DNA of 64,000 bases from Podarcis pityusensis (GCA_964106645.2 OZ067041.1); one strand, 5' to 3'; shown: positions 32,853 to 41,258, counted from the stretch's first letter. Made by a program: numbers and translations. Notes: generated by a model from the sequence alone, not told the origin.

Positions 32853-34252
32853 CATCTTATTTGTTTGTTTTTTAATAATTTTAATTAGCGATGTCACCAA
32901 AATAAGTTGTTTGTAACTAGTAAAACTTCATAATATCTGACTCCTATATTGCACAAAATTTCTGATTTTTCCCCACCTAAAAACCCAGAGTCTGAAAAGA
33001 GTAAATAAAGCAAAAGAATCAACAGTTTGCACTATTATTATTTATGTTCATCTTGCTTGACAGCATGAGTAGTCCTCTTTCACTTTGCAAGCTCCACCAC
33101 TATTTTATCAATTAGCAATACTAAACTCTGTTCATATTTTGCTATTTTTATTTCTAAACATATTAAGGCTATTTGTTTCCACCTGATATCCAATTTGCTA
33201 AAAATACATTTTCAGCCAGTTGATTCAAAATCCTAGCAGCTCTTATTTGTTCCATTTTGTCTTGTCTCTAGAGATTAGTTCAAAGCAATAGATCACACCT
33301 AACAGTGATGAGGTTGCAGCTTTGGACTCTATGAATGTAGATATATGCTCAGCTGCATATAGCAGAATTTCATGTTATCACCAGTTTTATTCCCTTGATG
33401 TTACAGAATAAACTTCATATCCACATGTAAATGAGGGCAAGTTGCATTACATGGCTTTTCCTTGTCATAAGTGCAGTGAAAGTTGAAGATTTGCATATTA
33501 CTACACTAATACAACTTGATCTAATAAGGACTGTCATTTTACCTCTTTTGTATTGTGGAATAGCTATGGCATGAAGTGTTGTGATAGATGGTCTTATAAG
33601 ATTTTGAACCCAGCTTTGTAGGCATGAATCATAACACACCAGGGAAAATGCCTAAAAAGAACTTACCATGCACTTCAATTGTGTATAGCTTTTGCCCTTC
33701 AGATGCAATTTCAATATTTTTATCGGTCACTTCTCTGTTCCAAAGTATTCAAACTTTACATCACTTGACCTTTTTTTTTATCTGCCATCCTATATCAAAT
33801 GTAATCAGGATGAGACAATAGTGAAACATCCCATTTGTGCATAGAGTGCCAAAAATGGGGGGGGGGGGCTATTCCAAAACTGCTTTATCCATAATTTTGG
33901 TAATTATTGATATACATAACAATATCATGTGGGAATATTGTGGCTTGCAACCTGAATACTCCAAAATGCTAGAAAATAACTTCAAGACTGTCTCTCTTAA
34001 TACCGCGTACAGTGAATGACAGCATCTCCCATGTTCAGCTGTCAGAATTGTGCAGAAAAAAATATCCTCCCTGCCCACAGCAAAAACATGAGCATTGGTT
34101 ATTTCTTGTACCTACTTTCATCATCAGACCTTTTTCCTTGCGCCTCTCACATTGACAACTGTACCAACTTGTACTCATCCTTTTTTCAACTTGTTAGTTT
34201 TTTAACCATATACAGTGGTACCTCGGGTTACAAATGCTTCAGGTTACATACG

Positions 34253-34660
34253 TGTGATGGGACGATGAGCTGCTTGTGTGTAAAATCCTAGTCCCTCAGA
34301 GTTTGGTCAAGTTTGCAAACCTCTGTCTGTAACGGAGCCCCTTAAACATGGCTCCGTCAGTCGCTGGCAGATTCCGACAGTGGTTGCTTTCGGAATCGCT
34401 TCCAACATAAAAGCTCCTTAACGGAAACACGTCTTCTGGACTCTCTGCGTGACAGTTTCCGGCGAGGAGTGGGTGTCCCTACAGGAGGTCCTGAAACCTC
34501 CCCACTGTTTTCGCTGGAAGTGTCTCTGAGCCATCCCTCCAGCTCACTTTCCCTCAGCTCAGCTCCTCTCCCCCTACTGGTTCCCTCTTCAGCTGCTGAG
34601 TCTCTCCCAACCTGTGTGAGCCCTTCCACCTCCCTTCCTTCCGATGGCAGTTCCCTGACA
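34253..34660 (-). repeat. 3' LTR (408 bp)
   Basis: TG...CA termini, immediately preceded on - by the PPT; same sequence as the 5' LTR. Confidence 0.97.
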
Positions 34661-37600
34661 TCCACCTCCCCTCCAGGGCCCCCTTCATCCCCTCTCGCCC
34701 CCTCCTCTACGGGCGGTGAGGAGGCAAAACCCCGGAATGAACTTCCTTCATCTTCCGATGTCCCGAACACTTCTCTCCACCTGTTGCGGTTCCTGGTCTC
34801 GAAGTACTCCTCCTCCTCAGAGTCCATCTCCCCTTCCCCTTCCGAGTCCGGGAATCCTTCCAACTCCTCCTCCTCATCGGTGGTCCCAAAGTATTCCCTC
34901 CGGAACCTCTCCACAGGCTGAGGTTTCCTTGGGAACCTTTGATGGAACGTTTCTATCAATACCTCGTCATTGATATCTTCTGCCATTACCCAAGTGTTTT
35001 CTGACTCCGGTTCTCCTTCCCACGCTACCAAATACTCCACCTGATCCCCCTTCCATCTGGCGTCGAGGATTTCTGCCACATGGCTGCTGCATTCCCTTTC
35101 TTCTATGACCGGTCCCCGAGTGGCCATCCCTTCTCGTCCCCCCTCATACGGTGACAGTAACGACCTGTGAAATACTGGGTGCAGTTTCATGTGGTTGGGT
35201 AACCGGAGCCTGAAAGCCACTGGGTTGACCTGTTGAATGACCTCAAAGGGACCCAATCTCCTGGGTCTTAATTTCTTACAACCTCCTTTGAACGGCAACC
35301 CTTGGGTTGACAGCCACACCCTATCTCCCACCCTTATGGTTTCACCTTCCCTTCGGTTCTTGTCTGCCTGCCTCTTGTATTCTTCCTTCGCCCTTTCTAA
35401 GTTGAGTTGGAGCTGACGATGGATTGCTTCCATTTCTTCTACAAAATGCTCGGCTGCCGGGACACCCCATCTCTCCCCTTCTCCCCCTGGGAAAGCCCTG
35501 GGATGACACCCATAATTAGCCAAGAAGGGGCTCATCCCTGTGGACACATTCTCGGCATTGTTGTAGGCAAATTCCGCCAGCGCCAACTTTTCTACCCAGT
35601 CATTCTCTCTGTCATTGACATAACACCTCAGGTATTGCTGGAGGACCCCGTTTGCTCTTTCCGCCTGCCCGTTGGTTTCAGGGTGCCGGGCAGTCGAAAA
35701 GTTGACCTCCACCTGCAGTAAGCTCATGAGCTTCCTCCAGAACCTGGAAGTAAATTGTTTTCCTCGGTCTGAGACCACCCTCAATGGCACCCCGTGCAAC
35801 CTAAAAATGTGTTCTACAAATAACTTCGCTGTCTCTTCCGCCATGACTGCATGCGAGCAGGCTACAAAGTGGCACATCTTTGTTAGTAGGTCTACCACCA
35901 CCATGATGGCTGTTTTCCCCTTGGACTTCGGCAGATCAGTCATAAAATCTATCGACACTGCCTCCCAAGGTCGTTCTGGGGTTGGTAAGGGTTCTAATAG
36001 CCCCGCCGGCGCCCGCCTCTCCCCTTTGGCTCGCTGGCATTGCTCGCACCCTCTTACATACTCCCGTACATCTTCCCTCACCTTAGGCCACCAAAATTCC
36101 CTGGTGACCAACCACATGGTTTTGTGTTGTCCAAAATGCCCCGCCGTGGGGCTGTCGTGCAACTGCTTGAGTACCCTCCCCCTTAAGTCTCCTTCAGGGA
36201 TATACAGTGCCCCTTTGTAATACAAAGCTCCATTTCTTTCCTCGAAACCCCCTGGTTCCTCTCCCTCACCCCTAAGACCTCTGAGCTTATTCTGGGCGTA
36301 TTCATCATTCTCTGTTTCCTCTACCAGTTCTCTTTGTCCCACCAATGCCGCCCCACACACCCAGCGGTCCTCTGGAATGACATGTCTCTCTTCGGGTGCT
36401 CCCTCCCCCTCCAAATATTCAGGTTTGCGTGAGAGAGCGTCCGCCCTAATGTTCTCTGGGCCTGGCACGTAACAAATCTCAAAGTTAAATTTGGAGAACT
36501 CCTGGGCCCATCTCACTTGCCGTTGGTTGAGCACTCGTGCCGTCCTCCAATACTCTAGGTTCTTGTGGTCAGTGCACACTTGCACCTTATGTTGTGCGCC
36601 AATTAGCAGGTGCCTCCATCTCCGGAACGCCTCATGAATGGCTAGTAGTTCTCGGTCATACACCGTGTAGTTCCTCTCGGATTTGTTCAGCTTTCGCGAA
36701 AAAAAGGCACACGGTCTCCACTCTGACTCCTCCTTCCCTGGCTGCAGAAGCACCGCCCCAATAGCTCTGTCTGATGCGTCAGTTTCCACTCTCATCGGTT
36801 TTTGTAAATCCACATGCAGGAGTTGTTGTTCCGAGGCGAAGGCCCTTTTTAGTTCCTCAAATGCTCGCTCCGCCTCCTCAGTCCAAACGAACTTCTTCTT
36901 ACTGCTGAGACAGTCCGTAATGGGCGCCGTCAGGTGGGCAAAGTTTCGGATGAACTTACGATAGAAGTTCCCAAATCCTAGGAACCTCTGCACATCCTTC
37001 CTTGTTTTGGGTGTTTTCCATTCCAGCACCGCCTGGACCTTGCCGGGATCCATGGCCAATCCCTTGTCTGACAGGCGATACCCCAGGAATTCCACCTCCT
37101 TGGTATGAAACTGACACTTCTCCAGTTTCACCCACAGCTGGTTGGCTTGCAGCCTGCTCAACACTTCTCTGACGTCTCTCACATGCTGCTCCTCATTCTC
37201 AGAATACACCAACACGTCGTCTAAGAAGGCCACACAATTCTTGTAAAGCAAAGGCCCCAGGACGTGGTTCATAAACGATTGAAAGCACGCGGAGCCTCCT
37301 TGTAGGCCGAAGGGCATAACTAAATATTCAAATGCCCCCAAAGGGGTGAACATGGTGGTTTTCCATTCATCCCCCTCCCTTATTCGTATCAGGTTGTACG
37401 CCCCCCTTAGGTCCAGTTTAGTAAAAATCTTTCCCTTCCTGACCCTTGTCAAAATGTCGTCAATCCTGGGCATAGGGAAAGCCACTGGTTCTGACACTGC
37501 ATTTAAGGCCCTGAAGTCACACACAAGCCTCGGCTTGTTCGTGTTTTTTTTATCCACAAAAAACACTGGGCTGCCCCCCACCGCCCTGGACTCTCTGATG

Positions 37601-38448
37601 AACCCTCTCTTCAAGTTCTTGTCAATGAACTCTCTTAGCTCCTGCATCTCTCTGTCTGACATGGCGTACAGCTTGCCTACAGGGAGCTGTGCCCCAGGGA
37701 GTAAATTGATTTGACAGTCAAAGGGTCTATGCGGGGGTAATTGGTCAGCTTCCCTTTCGCTGAAGACGTCGCGGAGATCTGCGTATTGTCGTGGTACCTT
37801 CACGTTCTCCGTTACTTCAGTCCCTGCTAGGGTGGCTTGGGCCCCTGCCAAACCCTTTCCCTCTTTGCAGTGTTCTAAGCAATGTGCTGAACCAAAAGAA
37901 ACCACTCTCTGATGCCAGCCCACCAGCGGATCATGTAACGCTAGCCAGCTCATCCCCAATATAATGGGAGCTCCTCCCAAGGTGGCCACATTAAACGCTA
38001 TCAGTTCGGTGTGCCTTGCCACCTTCATTATCATTGGGACGGTCTGCAAGCTGACTTCTCCTCCCAACAGCTCCCTGCCATCGATCGTGGTCACCTGCAG
38101 GGGGTTGCTTAAAGGGATCGTCTGTATCTGGTGTTCAGCTGCAAACTCTTTGCTCATGAAATTGCAGGAGCTGCCTGAGTCCAACAGCGCCTTTATCTTT
38201 AGAGGGTGTCCGTTTGGCAGCTCTAGCGCCACTTCTATCACTAGGGCGGGTTTAGGAGGTTCTGGCGTGGGCACTTTCACTGCTCTTTGGCCTGGCTGCT
38301 GTGCCCCGACGGTGGCAGCCAGGCGTTGGCTTTTACTTGCTTCGGTATTTCTTCCTCTCTTCCCTCCACAGCTCCTACCATCCCTTGCCATTCCTTCCTC
38401 TGGGGGCAGACTCTGGCAAAGTGACCTGGCTGTTGGCAGAGATAGCAT
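34357..38448 (-). CDS. pol: Pol polyprotein (protease, RT, RNase H, integrase, chromodomain, acidic tail); probably entered by -1 frameshift near 38331
   Basis: Protease ALLDSGSSCNF; RT KLDLRGAYN, MPFGL, FLDD; RNase H VETDASD...RELLAI...TDHKNL; IN zinc finger LHDSPTAGH...CEQC; DDE core SIDF/SDRG/NGQAER; GPF motif; chromodomain EYLVAWEG...NTW. The ORF overlaps gag in the -1 frame. Confidence 0.97.
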   Translation of the reverse strand: MLSLPTARSLCQSLPPEEGMARDGRSCGGKRGRNTEASKSQRLAATVGAQQPGQRAVKVPTPEPPKPALVIEVALELPNGHPLKIKALLDSGSSCNFMSKEFAAEHQIQTIPLSNPLQVTTIDGRELLGGEVSLQTVPMIMKVARHTELIAFNVATLGGAPIILGMSWLALHDPLVGWHQRVVSFGSAHCLEHCKEGKGLAGAQATLAGTEVTENVKVPRQYADLRDVFSEREADQLPPHRPFDCQINLLPGAQLPVGKLYAMSDREMQELREFIDKNLKRGFIRESRAVGGSPVFFVDKKNTNKPRLVCDFRALNAVSEPVAFPMPRIDDILTRVRKGKIFTKLDLRGAYNLIRIREGDEWKTTMFTPLGAFEYLVMPFGLQGGSACFQSFMNHVLGPLLYKNCVAFLDDVLVYSENEEQHVRDVREVLSRLQANQLWVKLEKCQFHTKEVEFLGYRLSDKGLAMDPGKVQAVLEWKTPKTRKDVQRFLGFGNFYRKFIRNFAHLTAPITDCLSSKKKFVWTEEAERAFEELKRAFASEQQLLHVDLQKPMRVETDASDRAIGAVLLQPGKEESEWRPCAFFSRKLNKSERNYTVYDRELLAIHEAFRRWRHLLIGAQHKVQVCTDHKNLEYWRTARVLNQRQVRWAQEFSKFNFEICYVPGPENIRADALSRKPEYLEGEGAPEERHVIPEDRWVCGAALVGQRELVEETENDEYAQNKLRGLRGEGEEPGGFEERNGALYYKGALYIPEGDLRGRVLKQLHDSPTAGHFGQHKTMWLVTREFWWPKVREDVREYVRGCEQCQRAKGERRAPAGLLEPLPTPERPWEAVSIDFMTDLPKSKGKTAIMVVVDLLTKMCHFVACSHAVMAEETAKLFVEHIFRLHGVPLRVVSDRGKQFTSRFWRKLMSLLQVEVNFSTARHPETNGQAERANGVLQQYLRCYVNDRENDWVEKLALAEFAYNNAENVSTGMSPFLANYGCHPRAFPGGEGERWGVPAAEHFVEEMEAIHRQLQLNLERAKEEYKRQADKNRREGETIRVGDRVWLSTQGLPFKGGCKKLRPRRLGPFEVIQQVNPVAFRLRLPNHMKLHPVFHRSLLSPYEGGREGMATRGPVIEERECSSHVAEILDARWKGDQVEYLVAWEGEPESENTWVMAEDINDEVLIETFHQRFPRKPQPVERFRREYFGTTDEEEELEGFPDSEGEGEMDSEEEEYFETRNRNRWREVFGTSEDEGSSFRGFASSPPVEEGARGDEGGPGGEVDVRELPSEGREVEGLTQVGRDSAAEEGTSRGRGAELRESELEGWLRDTSSENSGEVSGPPVGTPTPRRKLSRRESRRRVSVKELLCWKRFRKQPLSESASD
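34661..34674 (-). other. Polypurine tract (plus-strand primer)
   Basis: GGAGGGGAGGTGGA directly abuts the TG of the 3' LTR on the - strand. Confidence 0.9.
38269..38337 (-). promoter_or_regulatory. Predicted -1 ribosomal frameshift signal (slip site plus H-type pseudoknot)
   Basis: A_GTA_AAA, 6-nt spacer, perfect 10-bp stem GCCTGGCTGC/GCAGCCAGGC, and loop GGGCAC complementary to downstream GTGCCC, all within the gag/pol overlap. Confidence 0.7.
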
Positions 38449-39290
38449 TTCCGGGCGCCTTTTCCCTCCTTCTTTCCCCCCTCACTGGGCTTTGAAACTG
38501 CGCGCGCGCGCGCTGTTCCGATTTCCATCGGCTCTGCCGGCGGGAAAGTTGGCTCTGGAATGTCTGGAATGCGGAACTCCTTCCAACGTTCCCCCTTCCC
38601 TTCCCGCCTCTCCAATGCTCTCGCCTCCTGGCGCGCTCCTATGGTCAGCGCTGATTTGGTCAGCTGGTCCATAGACTCCGCCCTGGGCGCCCGGGAAAGT
38701 TCGTCTTTCACAGCCGAAGAAAGCCCTTCTTCAAAGAGCATTTGAATGGGTTCCGCCGATAGATCCCACCCCAATTTATGGATCAACATGGTGAATTCAG
38801 TCCAGTACTCACGGACAGATCGGCTCCCCTGTTTGCAAGCCATTAACTGTCTGCGGACCACTCCCTGTTCAATATCGCTGGAAAACATCAGATCCATGGC
38901 GCGAAAGAACTTCATCGTGTCCTTTAGGACGTCACTATTCGCTGCCATCAGGGGTCTAACCCAGTCTCTCGCCCCCTTTTCAAGATGCCCAATCACGAAA
39001 GCCACTCGTGATTCCTCGTCAGGGAATTCATCAAACTGCAGATTGAGGGCATATTGCATCTCTGTCCGAAAGCCATGATAGTCTTTGGGCTCCCCCCCAA
39101 ACTTCTGCACCAATCCTGGTACCTTTCTGACGAGCTGGGTGTCTTTCCCCTTTTTGTCTGCATCCTGAGCCCTCCTCTCCTCAAGCCTCGCCGTCTGCAG
39201 CGCTAGCTGGACCTCCAACACCCGGTACCTTTCTTCCAGGCTTGGACCCGCTCCAGCTCCTGCTTCTCCGGTTCCGGCTGGGTTGCTCAT
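38277..39290 (-). CDS. gag: Gag (337 aa), sushi/PEG10-like capsid plus CCHC zinc knuckle
   Basis: ATG in good context (gcatcATG). Capsid-like region RVAFVIGHLEKGARDW...QGSRSVREYWTEF...LFEEGLSSAVKDEL, EPMEIG motif, and zinc knuckle CYLCQQPGHFARVC. Confidence 0.95.
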   Translation of the reverse strand: MSNPAGTGEAGAGAGPSLEERYRVLEVQLALQTARLEERRAQDADKKGKDTQLVRKVPGLVQKFGGEPKDYHGFRTEMQYALNLQFDEFPDEESRVAFVIGHLEKGARDWVRPLMAANSDVLKDTMKFFRAMDLMFSSDIEQGVVRRQLMACKQGSRSVREYWTEFTMLIHKLGWDLSAEPIQMLFEEGLSSAVKDELSRAPRAESMDQLTKSALTIGARQEARALERREGKGERWKEFRIPDIPEPTFPPAEPMEIGTARARAVSKPSEGGKKEGKGARKCYLCQQPGHFARVCPQRKEWQGMVGAVEGREEEIPKQVKANAWLPPSGHSSQAKEQ

Positions 39291-39322
39291 GATGCCTTCT
39301 CCTGCACAAGCTGCTCACGAAG

Positions 39323-39333
39323 ACTGTCGGAAT
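39323..39333 (-). other. Self-priming-type primer binding site (ATTCCGACAGT)
   Basis: Starts 2 nt after the 5' LTR. It does not begin with TGG and is the exact complement of ACTGTCGGAAT inside the LTR (39464-39454 on -). Confidence 0.8.
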
Positions 39334-39335
39334 GC

Positions 39336-39743
39336 TGTGATGGGACGATGAGCTGCTTGTGTGTAAAATCCTAGTCCCTCAGAGTTTGGTCAAGTTTGCA
39401 AACCTCTGTCTGTAACGGAGCCCCTTAAACATGGCTCCGTCAGTCGCTGGCAGATTCCGACAGTGGTTGCTTTCGGAATCGCTTCCAACATAAAAGCTCC
39501 TTAACGGAAACACGTCTTCTGGACTCTCTGCGTGACAGTTTCCGGCGAGGAGTGGGTGTCCCTACAGGAGGTCCTGAAACCTCCCCACTGTTTTCGCTGG
39601 AAGTGTCTCTGAGCCATCCCTCCAGCTCACTTTCCCTCAGCTCAGCTCCTCTCCCCCTACTGGTTCCCTCTTCAGCTGCTGAGTCTCTCCCAACCTGTGT
39701 GAGCCCTTCCACCTCCCTTCCTTCCGATGGCAGTTCCCTGACA
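39336..39743 (-). repeat. 5' LTR (408 bp)
   Basis: TG...CA termini; no differences from 34253-34660 found by eye; lies upstream of gag. Confidence 0.97.
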
Positions 39744-41258
39744 ATACGCTTCAGGTTACAGACTCCACTAACCCAGAAATAGTACCTCAGGTTAAGAACT
39801 TTGCTTCAGGATGAGAACAGAAATTGCGCAGCAGTGGCGCAGCAGCAGCAGCGGGAGGCCCCATTAGCTAAAGTTGTGCTTCAGGTTAAGAACAGTTTCA
39901 GGTTAAGAACGGACCTCTGGAATGAATTAAGTACTTAACCCGAGGTACCACTGTACATGGAAATGAGATCAACCAGAAGCCGTGCAGGAAGGCTACTCTT
40001 CCACTTTTGTTCCTGTTTGCCAGGATGGGGGAATCAAGTTCACAGTAATGACTTAAAGCAGGTATTGGGAATCTGCAGCCCTTGATATGTTGTTGGACAT
40101 CTCCCGTCATCTCAATCCTGATCATTGGCAATTATGGGTGAGGCGGATGGGTGCTGAGAATCATACACCATCCAGGGGCTCATAGGTCCTCCATGTCTTG
40201 ACCTAAATGATGATGGGATTCAGCCTCAATATGGTTGTAAAATGTCATCCCCAATAAGCCCAGCTGTGTTGTGAATTAGCTCTCCTATTAGCTCAAAACT
40301 GAGGGTTGGGACACATGTTAAACTCAACATAGGGTTGCTGCTGAAAATAGGCTTATGGTGATGTGTTCTCCCTGGTCCAGTCCTATGATATTCAGCTGCT
40401 TACTGCATGGATCTCCTCTGTCATCTTCTGAGATTTTACATTCCTTGACACGTGTTTGTGTTGTCCAATTTCAGTAACGTTTATGGGAAATTTCATATTT
40501 CTTAGTTTAATTTAGGTACTGTTGATAAAATACTTGACGATTTAGATGGCTATTACTTTGTCCATTGTCCATCAAATATGAAATGCATCTGTTCTCTCAA
40601 TCCTAAATATCTAGAAAATATTATATCTGTACTAAAATTTAGCATCTAAGGAGCAATTAAGTGAGAAGAGTTGCTTCTTTATATAAAAACCATGGTCTTA
40701 GGAAGCTGCCATCTACAGTGATCTGTTATCACTGCTAACATCAAAATCCCATGCCAAATTCTCGCAAACACTTTAAATATAAATGCTGCTCCAACACATA
40801 TATTATTAGGTTTGGTTTTTTTAAAAAAAATACTCTTTACCCTGTTGGATTAGTCAGCATCCCAGGGATTAATCATTTGGATTTAGTGCAGTAAACACTT
40901 TGTAGTGTAATTTAAACATGCAGTAAGAATAATGCCTTGCACCATTATTCACAGCATGTCTTTAAAATATAGTAATCAGCAAGCTCTAGCTGGTATCAAA
41001 TTTGCAGGGCAAATGCATCTAGAGATTATTGCTGGTAACCTTATTTAGTTTTACTTCATTCTGCAAAGAGAGTAAATTTTATTTTATTTTAAACCATAAA
41101 TTCAAGAATAGAATATATAGAATTCTTTGGTCAACTCCTTAAGAGTTCAACTATGGTTATGTTACATAATTTCCTTTTGACAGTTGGCTAAGTTAGCATC
41201 ATTGTTATATCTGAATGAAGCAGAAGCTAGCTTTATTCTACCTTCATCATTCTTGTTA

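What the first reader, a model, noticed from the sequence alone, without database searches (positions are those of the whole stretch)
34726..34908. Retrotransposon integrase tail carries two tandem LEDGF-IBM/TND-interacting-motif (TIM) mimics
Seen: just after the chromodomain, Pol has two copies of one pattern, RFRREYF-GTTDEEEE-LEGF (34908-34852) and RWREVF-GTSEDEGSS-FRGF (34782-34726). Each is an amphipathic helix ending in F, an 8-9 residue acidic linker with CK2-type S/T sites, then [F/L]xGF. Known: this is the architecture of the motif by which JPO2/CDCA7L, POGZ, IWS1 and MLL1 bind the LEDGF/p75 integrase-binding domain and related TFIIS N-terminal domains. Examples recalled from memory are IWS1 DIFGESGDEEEEEFTGF and POGZ QLFEGESETESFYGF; JPO2 also has two in tandem. 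HIV-1 integrase hijacks the same LEDGF pocket through a different surface. Inference: this lizard chromovirus may mimic a host motif to tether its intasome to LEDGF/HRP2 or Pol II elongation factors and so integrate into transcribed gene bodies. Its position in an LSAMP intron fits this but proves nothing. I know of no description of TIMs in an LTR-retrotransposon integrase.
Basis: partly seen in the sequence, partly recalled or inferred. Interest (0 to 1): 0.9.

Follow-up and report, generated by a model that had tools for sequence, protein, structure and literature searches.

The report
Host-like tethering motifs in retrotransposon integrase
A young, intact gypsy-type retrotransposon of a lizard carries, in the floppy tail of its integrase, two conserved copies of the short motif that host proteins use to dock onto the chromatin reader LEDGF, which suggests but does not prove a new way for a retrotransposon to choose its insertion sites.

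Summary
On the minus strand, 34253-39743 is a complete Ty3/gypsy chromovirus with 408-bp identical LTRs, a 5-bp target duplication and intact Gag and Pol. After the chromodomain, Pol has two motifs (aa 1181-1199 and 1223-1241) built as an aromatic helix anchor, an 8-9 residue acidic/Ser/Thr/Gly linker, and [F/L]xGF.

The motifs are not chance. They match the published TIM/IBM architecture. A composition-preserving shuffle gives at least two matches in 0.02% of trials. They occur in every member of one well-supported clade (three subfamilies, 44-84% identity) and in none of about 90 other chromovirus tails.

The anchor residues are kept while the linker and spacer drift, and synonymous sites are near saturation. 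Selection therefore acts on the protein. The same clade has lost two or three residues of the chromodomain's aromatic cage.

Binding to LEDGF/HRP2 or any other TFIIS N-terminal domain could not be tested, because no partner sequence was available by reference. Integration bias was also not tested. I found no earlier description in the papers held.

Verdict: these are real, selected short linear motifs. LEDGF/TND tethering is the best-supported reading (about 0.5) but is unproven.

The parts
34253..39743 (-). Complete Ty3/gypsy chromovirus insertion (5491 bp), flanked by the 5-bp target-site duplication ATACG at 34248-34252 and 39744-39748
   Evidence: Direct repeat. Base-by-base LTR comparison. 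TG..CA ends and the duplication read directly.
39336..39743 (-). 5' LTR, 408 bp
   Evidence: 100% identical to the 3' LTR.
34253..34660 (-). 3' LTR, 408 bp. Its first 301 nt in element orientation (34660 down to 34360) also encode the last ~101 residues of Pol.
   Evidence: The Pol ORF ends at 34357.
38277..39290 (-). Gag ORF (337 aa): capsid-like domain plus a CCHC zinc knuckle
   Evidence: Pfam Retrotrans_gag, Ty3_capsid and zf-CCHC.
34357..38448 (-). Pol ORF (1363 aa): protease, RT, RNase H, integrase (zinc domain, catalytic core, SH3), chromodomain and a 192-aa tail
   Evidence: Pfam hits in that order. ORF with no stops.
34936..35079 (-). Chromodomain (Pol aa 1124-1171) with a degenerate aromatic cage (His / Trp / Glu in place of Tyr / Trp / Tyr-Phe)
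   Evidence: Pfam Chromo, E = 7e-10. Alignment with 20 other chromoviral chromodomains. AlphaFold2 pLDDT about 90.
34852..34908 (-). Motif 1 (aa 1181-1199): helix anchor F1182/Y1186/F1187, 8-residue linker GTTDEEEE, then LEGF
34783..34851 (-). Acidic spacer between the motifs (aa 1200-1222). Poorly conserved and variable in length.
   Evidence: Mean column identity 0.37, with indels.
34726..34782 (-). Motif 2 (aa 1223-1241): anchor W1224/V1227/F1228, 9-residue linker GTSEDEGSS, then FRGF. Its five anchor residues are invariant in all seven two-motif family members.
34661..34700 (-). Polypurine tract region next to the 3' LTR. It also encodes the Gly/Glu-rich stretch of the tail.
   Evidence: Purine-rich sequence read directly. 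The GGPGGEVDVRELPSE stretch, conserved across the family, spans the PPT/LTR junction.

Best explanation
The two motifs are selected short linear motifs in the disordered C-terminal tail of the integrase of a lacertid-lizard chromovirus clade. They most likely act as TND-interacting motifs of the LEDGF/HRP2-binding (FxGF) type. The short amphipathic helix would put its aromatic anchor into the first hydrophobic pocket of a host TFIIS-N-terminal-type domain. The acidic, probably CK2-phosphorylated linker would lie on the basic patch. The FxGF would fill the second pocket. This would tether the intasome to a reader of transcribed chromatin, as host partners such as IWS1, JPO2 or JIL-1 are tethered. 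Shown here: the motif architecture, its disorder context, protein-level conservation, a single origin in one clade, and the co-occurring decay of the chromodomain's methyl-lysine cage. Inferred: the binding partner, the phosphorylation, that the tail stays on mature integrase, and any effect on target-site choice.
For: The architecture meets each published TIM feature (PMC9987994). The pattern is rare in composition-matched shuffles. It is present in all 10 intact-tail members of one clade with SH-aLRT 100 among 141 chromovirus integrase C-termini. It is absent from about 90 other tails, including the sister squamate elements from Vipera and Rhineura. In seven two-motif members, motif 2 anchors have column identity 1.0 and motif 1 anchors 0.8. 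This compares with 0.37-0.46 for spacer, linker and downstream tail. Against L001 and L002, third-codon-position identity is only 0.45 and 0.41, and conserved F and G anchors use different synonymous codons. A conserved DFxGFDE in fly JIL-1, found the same way, does bind the LEDGF domain of JASPer (PMC6877644). Integrase C-terminal tails are a known place for tethering peptides: MLV IN-BET and Ty5 IN-Sir4 (PMC4176367). The clade has lost the first and third cage residues of its chromodomain, and one subfamily has lost all three. This fits a change of tethering mode (cage definition in PMC3350952).
Against: No binding, co-folding or phosphorylation test was possible. Short-motif matches often prove false. 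Motif 1 of this copy has Leu in place of the first Phe (Met in P0002), and one relative has FEEF without the Gly. The P0009 subfamily has a Ser/Thr linker with no acidic residues. AlphaFold2 gives only a three-residue helix before motif 2, at low confidence. A profile of 16 motif instances retrieved no LEDGF-partner chain from the PDB sequence set. Named members come from one genus only, and the two unnamed contigs are of unknown host.
Confidence: 0.5

Rival explanations
1. The motifs are real, selected short linear motifs, but their partner is not a TND/IBD. Possible partners are histones H2A-H2B or H3-H4 (bound through acidic-aromatic anchor motifs like those of histone chaperones), a coactivator surface that binds acidic-hydrophobic activation peptides, or a surface of the element's own Gag or integrase.
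For: All the conservation evidence says only that the residues matter, not what they bind. The spacer holds a further acidic run followed by an aromatic residue in most members. The IWS1 region that carries TIMs also binds histones (PMC13175633).
Against: The most strictly conserved element is the F-x-G-F tetrapeptide at a fixed 8-9 residue distance from an aromatic helix anchor. That is the specific signature reported for LEDGF/HRP2 partners, not for generic acidic-aromatic histone or activator motifs.
Confidence: 0.3
2. The match is a chance product of an acidic low-complexity tail and has no function.
For: The tail is 30% Glu/Asp and 9% Phe. An [FLM]xGF tetrapeptide alone appears in about 10% of shuffles.
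Against: The full pattern appears twice in only 0.025% of shuffles. The anchors are invariant across subfamilies whose synonymous sites are near saturation. None of about 90 other chromovirus tails has it in an acidic context.
Confidence: 0.05
3. The conservation reflects a nucleotide-level cis element (for example something near the polypurine tract) or an overlapping reading frame, not the Pol protein.
For: The motifs lie 65-250 nt upstream of the PPT/3' LTR. Long plus-strand ORFs overlap them (34469-34921 and 34716-34973). The stretch over the PPT/LTR junction is indeed conserved for nucleotide reasons.
Against: In the motif codons the amino acids are kept while third positions change: TTC/TTT for Phe and GGT/GGG/GGA for Gly. 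Over the two motifs, the proportion of differences against L001 is 0.19 at non-synonymous sites and 0.70 at synonymous sites. The antisense ORFs are what GAR-rich codons read backwards would give.
Confidence: 0.03

Closest known systems
Cellular TND-interacting motifs / LEDGF IBD-binding motifs (IWS1, JPO2/CDCA7L, POGZ, MLL1/KMT2A, MED1, CDC7-ASK; fly JIL-1)
   Same: A disordered context, a short helix with an aromatic or aliphatic anchor, an acidic Ser/Thr/Gly linker of 8-16 residues with CK2-type sites, a terminal FxGF, and often several motifs in series (PMC9987994; PMC6877644).
   Different: Here the carrier is a retrotransposon integrase, not a host transcription factor. Motif 1 of this copy has Leu for the first Phe. 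Binding is untested. No significant sequence similarity to any solved partner chain was found.
Lentiviral integrase-LEDGF/p75 tethering
   Same: An integrase would be tethered through the LEDGF IBD to transcribed, H3K36-methylated chromatin.
   Different: HIV-1 integrase binds through a structured, prearranged catalytic-core dimer surface, whereas cellular partners use an unstructured motif (PMC10854676; PMC4176367). LEDGF is reported not to bind integrases of other retroviral genera. Here the proposed ligand is a host-like linear motif in a disordered tail.
Gammaretroviral (MLV) integrase C-terminal tail binding the BET ET domain
   Same: A short peptide in a disordered integrase C-terminal tail, dispensable for catalysis, docks on a small helical domain of a chromatin reader and steers integration (PMC4176367).
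Yeast Ty5 integrase targeting domain-Sir4, and Ty1 integrase-AC40
   Same: An LTR-retrotransposon integrase C-terminus carries a short targeting peptide for a host chromatin or transcription protein (PMC4176367; PMC7459421, listed).
   Different: The partners and motifs differ. Those cases are shown by experiment, and this one is not.
Chromoviral chromodomain targeting (MAGGY group I chromodomain reading H3K9me2/3)
   Same: The same element class, and the same position of the chromodomain at the integrase C-terminus.
   Different: This clade lacks the first and third aromatic cage residues. That pattern is described as group II and reported only from plant elements (PMC3350952). The clade adds the FxGF tail.

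Membership tests
TND-interacting motif (TIM) / LEDGF IBD-binding motif (IBM) | Lies in an intrinsically disordered region | tested here: met
   No Pfam domain after aa 1171. AlphaFold2 pLDDT is below 50 over most of aa 1186-1262.
TND-interacting motif (TIM) / LEDGF IBD-binding motif (IBM) | Obligate short alpha-helix carrying a conserved F/V/L/I anchor | tested here: inconclusive
   Motif 1 has a predicted helix at aa 1179-1187 that ends in Y-F. Motif 2 has only a three-residue helical turn at 1225-1227, at low confidence. The anchors W/F(-4) and F(0) are conserved and lie one helical turn apart. This is a prediction only.
TND-interacting motif (TIM) / LEDGF IBD-binding motif (IBM) | Acidic linker of 8-16 residues enriched in D/E/G/S/T | tested here: met
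   The linkers are 8 residues (GTTDEEEE) and 9 residues (GTSEDEGSS). Composition is kept, though sequence is not, in the relatives. The exception is the P0009 subfamily, which has a Ser/Thr-only linker.
TND-interacting motif (TIM) / LEDGF IBD-binding motif (IBM) | FxGF, reported as essential in all known LEDGF/HRP2 partners | tested here: met
   Motif 2 is FRGF here, and FRGF or FLGF in all eight sequences that have it. Motif 1 is LEGF in this copy, so it is not strict. It is FVGF, FEGF or FQGF in other subfamilies, MEGF in P0002 and FEEF in P0156.
TND-interacting motif (TIM) / LEDGF IBD-binding motif (IBM) | CK2-type phosphorylation of the linker that raises affinity | not testable with these tools
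   Two S/T-x-x-D/E consensus sites are present in each linker, read directly from the sequence. Phosphorylation itself cannot be assessed.
TND-interacting motif (TIM) / LEDGF IBD-binding motif (IBM) | Direct binding to a TFIIS N-terminal domain or the LEDGF IBD | not testable with these tools
No TND/IBD sequence could be obtained by reference, so the job was not sent.
Chromovirus (Ty3/gypsy with an integrase chromodomain) | PR-RT-RNase H-IN order with a C-terminal chromodomain, LTRs and a target-site duplication | tested here: met
Group I (classical) chromoviral chromodomain | Three aromatic cage residues (Y24, W45, Y48 in HP1 numbering) | tested here: not met
   The residues here are His, Trp and Glu at the three positions. 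The P0009 subfamily has lost all three. The sister Vipera and Rhineura elements and the fish elements keep them (definition in PMC3350952).

The most novel reading that the evidence does not exclude
This lacertid chromovirus clade has switched its targeting mode. The chromodomain lost its methyl-lysine cage on the same branch on which the integrase tail gained host-like FxGF motifs. The motifs may have arisen by convergence or by capture of a piece of a host elongation-factor gene. The element would then ride on LEDGF/HRP2 into H3K36-methylated gene bodies, as lentiviruses do, but by mimicking the host's own linear motif instead of using a folded surface. This would be the first LEDGF-pathway retrotransposon.
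Probability: 0.35. Interest if true: 0.85.

Novelty: new variant of a known kind. Interest (0 to 1): 0.72.

Why it matters
Tethering of integrases to chromatin readers explains where retroviruses and yeast retrotransposons land. For vertebrate LTR retrotransposons almost nothing is known beyond the chromodomain. A retrotransposon that copies the host's LEDGF/TND docking motif would be an independent second route to the tether that lentiviruses use. It would show that TIMs are open to mimicry by selfish elements. It would also supply a natural set of variant peptides (F, L or M at the first FxGF position; acidic or Ser/Thr linkers) for studying TND specificity. The paired loss of the chromodomain cage makes a directly testable prediction: this clade and its sister families should differ in where their young copies sit.

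Tried and rejected
- **PDB sequence searches.** I searched with the 88-aa tail, with each motif alone, and with a 16-instance motif profile. All returned only chance hits (MHC class I, glycerophosphate oxidase, ARL2) and no LEDGF-partner chain. That is the usual outcome for short motifs, so it is not evidence either way.
- **ESM Atlas.** The feature search on aa 1176-1246 gave scores below 0.8, which is uninformative.
- **Homologue searches.** The search from the P0005 tail found only P0005 itself. An exact look-up of this Pol found no record.
- **Primary papers.** Tesina 2015, Sharma 2018 and Cermakova 2021 are not held. The motif definition therefore rests on the 2023 review.
- **Reads.** The flanks at 34200-34252 and 39744-39990 are themselves a very high-copy repeat. 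The many 'skips about 5500' joints therefore cannot be read as empty-site alleles. The runs guessed to be RNA hold only 90-99% similar contigs and do not show transcription of this copy.
- **Complex prediction.** I did not type one from memory.
- **Rejected explanations.** The nucleotide-level cis-element explanation and the chance explanation were both considered and rejected.
- **Consensus lines.** The alignment tools print majority-consensus lines for the two short tail alignments.

Full report
**The element.** The finding lies in a complete LTR retrotransposon on the minus strand, 34253-39743 (5491 bp).
- Two 408-bp LTRs (34253-34660 and 39336-39743) are identical at every base.
- The LTRs begin TG and end CA. 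The 5-bp duplication ATACG flanks the element, and a purine-rich tract abuts the 3' LTR.
- Gag (38277-39290) has a retrotransposon capsid domain and a CCHC knuckle.
- Pol (34357-38448, 1363 aa, no stops) has protease, RT, RNase H, integrase zinc domain, catalytic core, Tf2-type SH3 and a chromodomain, in that order.
- This makes it a chromovirus of the Ty3/gypsy group, inserted very recently. It is the only copy in the window.
- The Pol frame runs on for 192 residues after the chromodomain. The last ~101 of these are encoded inside the 3' LTR.

**The observation.**
- Each has aromatic residues spaced one helical turn apart: F1182/Y1186/F1187, and W1224/V1227/F1228.
- Each then has a linker of 8 or 9 residues made only of G, T, S, D and E, with two S/T-x-x-D/E sites. 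Then comes LEGF or FRGF.
- No Pfam family covers this region.
- An AlphaFold2 model of aa 1110-1262, built on a nine-sequence alignment, folds the chromodomain with pLDDT about 90. It puts a helix at aa 1179-1187 and a three-residue turn at 1225-1227. The rest is below pLDDT 50.
- In 200,000 shuffles of the 91-aa tail before the LTR, a pattern of this type (F, 8-16 residues with at least three D/E, no K/R, at least 75% D/E/S/T/G, then [FLM]xGF) appeared at least once in 0.28% and at least twice in 0.025%. A bare [FLM]xGF appeared in about 10%.

**What the literature says defines the motif.** The 2023 review of the TFIIS N-terminal domain gives these features (PMC9987994):
- TIMs have an obligate alpha-helix with conserved F/V/L/I, which binds the first hydrophobic pocket.
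- They have a flexible acidic linker of 8-16 residues, enriched in Glu/Asp, Gly and Ser/Thr, that CK2 phosphorylates.
- They have an optional FxGF, which fills the second pocket. All known LEDGF and HRP2 partners carry it, and it is essential there.
- Several proteins carry two or three motifs in series.

The window's motifs meet each sequence feature, except that motif 1 has Leu for the first Phe. There is a precedent for arguing from the motif: fly JIL-1 was noted to have a conserved DFxGFDE, and it binds the LEDGF domain of JASPer (PMC6877644).

**Relatives.**
- A word-based search with the tail found three Podarcis muralis Pol proteins, 69-84% identical in the tail.
- An exhaustive HMMER search with Pol aa 1001-1363 found 14,605 proteins. 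I examined the best 150. A further search added two more P. muralis members.
- The motif is present in three groups:
  - the two-motif subfamily: this copy, P0001-P0004, P0156 and P0157, plus the truncated P0042;
  - P0005, from an unnamed metagenome contig, 46% identical, with one motif (...WKTVF-ESDENEDTD-FLGF);
  - the P0009/P0154/P0155 subfamily of P. muralis, 44% identical, with ...DDWLF-TPTLSAST-FQGF directly after the chromodomain.
- About 90 other chromovirus tails have nothing of the kind. Fish elements carry a basic PRPRGRPRR tail. The Vipera and Rhineura elements carry acidic tails without aromatic anchors.
- In a maximum-likelihood tree of 141 integrase C-terminal regions, all ten FxGF-bearing rows form one clade with SH-aLRT 100. 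The clade also holds P0010, a fragment whose tail carries a deletion. Its sister group (support 89) holds the Vipera and Rhineura elements. The tree came from a quick search on 179 columns and no rows were left out.

**Selection acts on the protein.**
- In the seven two-motif members, mean pairwise column identity is 1.0 for the five anchors of motif 2 and 0.8 for those of motif 1. It is 0.46 for the motif 2 linker, 0.37 for the spacer, 0.39 downstream, and 0.75 for the chromodomain. This is the usual signature of a short linear motif.
- DNA was available for two relatives, L001 and L002. Third-codon-position identity to the window is 0.45 and 0.41. Only 48% and 42% of identical amino acids use the same codon, so synonymous sites are near saturation.
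- Over the two motifs, the proportion of differences against L001 is 0.19 at non-synonymous sites and 0.70 at synonymous sites. The Nei-Gojobori ratios themselves are unreliable at this divergence.
- The conserved Phe and Gly anchors use different synonymous codons in the three sequences. This excludes a nucleotide-level cis element or an overlapping antisense frame as the cause.
- Leu in the window's motif 1 (TTG) is one base from the Phe codons of the other subfamilies.

**A correlated change in the chromodomain.** Classical chromodomains need three aromatic residues (Y24, W45, Y48). Chromoviral group II domains lack the first and usually the third, and have been reported only from plants (PMC3350952).
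- In the alignment, the fish, Vipera and Rhineura elements keep all three.
- The two-motif subfamily and P0005 have His/Glu/Gln, Trp and Glu at those places.
- The P0009 subfamily has lost all three.
- The FxGF tail and the decay of the cage therefore map to the same branch. I read this as circumstantial support for a change of tethering mode. It is an inference.

**How it most likely works.** Integrase C-terminal tails are an established place for tethering peptides. The disordered tail of MLV integrase binds the BET ET domain, and a six-residue peptide at the Ty5 integrase C-terminus binds Sir4. The reviewers of that field predicted further cases (PMC4176367). LEDGF binds lentiviral integrases through a folded surface, while its cellular partners use the unstructured motif (PMC10854676). 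It is reported not to bind integrases of other retroviral genera.

The best-supported reading is that this clade's integrase presents host-like TIMs to a TND. The FxGF points to LEDGF/HRP2, which would place the intasome on transcribed chromatin. I put this at about 0.5. That the motifs are functional at all I put at about 0.85 or more. The main rival (0.3) is a different partner for the same residues.

**What could not be done.** No TND or IBD sequence was obtainable by reference, so no co-fold was run. I did not type one from memory. Integration bias needs the whole genome.

**Sequencing runs.** Near-identical family sequence occurs at very high summed depth in at least five coded organisms. 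Because the insertion sits inside another high-copy repeat, the skipping joints do not show an empty allele. The contigs from runs guessed to be RNA do not prove transcription.

**Earlier notes.** Four other first-stage notes on this genome report the same motif in other copies. They are the same kind of unchecked reading and are not independent support.

**Novelty.** Searches found no report of such a motif in an LTR-retrotransposon integrase. The searches were 'TND-interacting motif' with 'retrotransposon' (0 papers), LEDGF with chromovirus, FxGF, and retrotransposon/integrase/LEDGF/short linear motif/tether. The principle of an integrase-tail peptide that tethers to a chromatin reader is known. 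The motif class, the proposed reader and the paired loss of the chromodomain cage are new. I therefore rate it a new variant of a known kind.

Noticed in passing
window 34360-34660 (minus strand); also P0001-P0005: Pol reads about 101 codons into the 3' LTR. The LTR-encoded end, a basic run followed by LLCWKR and an acidic Ser-rich tip, is kept in the two-motif subfamily and partly in the 46%-identical P0005. So U3 of the LTR doubles as coding sequence for a conserved integrase terminus, possibly a nuclear localisation signal.
   Followed up: partly
window 34936-35079 (minus strand): The chromodomain keeps only the middle Trp of the aromatic cage (His/Trp/Glu). This is the 'group II' pattern that the literature describes only for plant chromoviruses, seen here in a vertebrate clade. 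The related P0009 subfamily has lost all three residues.
   Followed up: partly
window 34450-34530 (minus strand), Pol aa ~1307-1332: There is a third conserved stretch in the LTR-encoded tail: a hydrophobic W-L (or L / L-I) followed by D-T-S-S-E-N-S-G-E-type Ser/acidic residues. It is present across subfamilies and could be a helix-plus-acidic TIM of the kind that lacks FxGF, or another CK2-site cluster.
   Followed up: no
window 34200-34252 and 39744-39990: The sequence on both sides of the insertion has summed contig depth thousands of times that of the unique flank at 34000-34199 in four runs. The chromovirus therefore inserted into another very high-copy repeat.
   Followed up: no
window 34000-39990: Near-identical 31-mers of this family occur in runs of at least five coded organisms (A-E), at very high depth across the whole element. 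Runs guessed to be RNA (organism F) hold 90-99% similar contigs of up to 500 nt. The family is abundant and shared among related species.
   Followed up: partly
window 38277-38448 (minus strand): The Gag and Pol ORFs overlap by at least 171 nt, with Pol in the -1 frame relative to Gag. This suggests frameshift expression of Gag-Pol.
   Followed up: no
P0006, P0007, P0008, P0112, P0113 and others: Many database 'proteins' that match the integrase C-terminus are chimeric gene models that fuse chromovirus fragments to host exons (receptor-, protease- and P450-like). These are annotation artefacts to keep in mind when counting tails.
   Followed up: no
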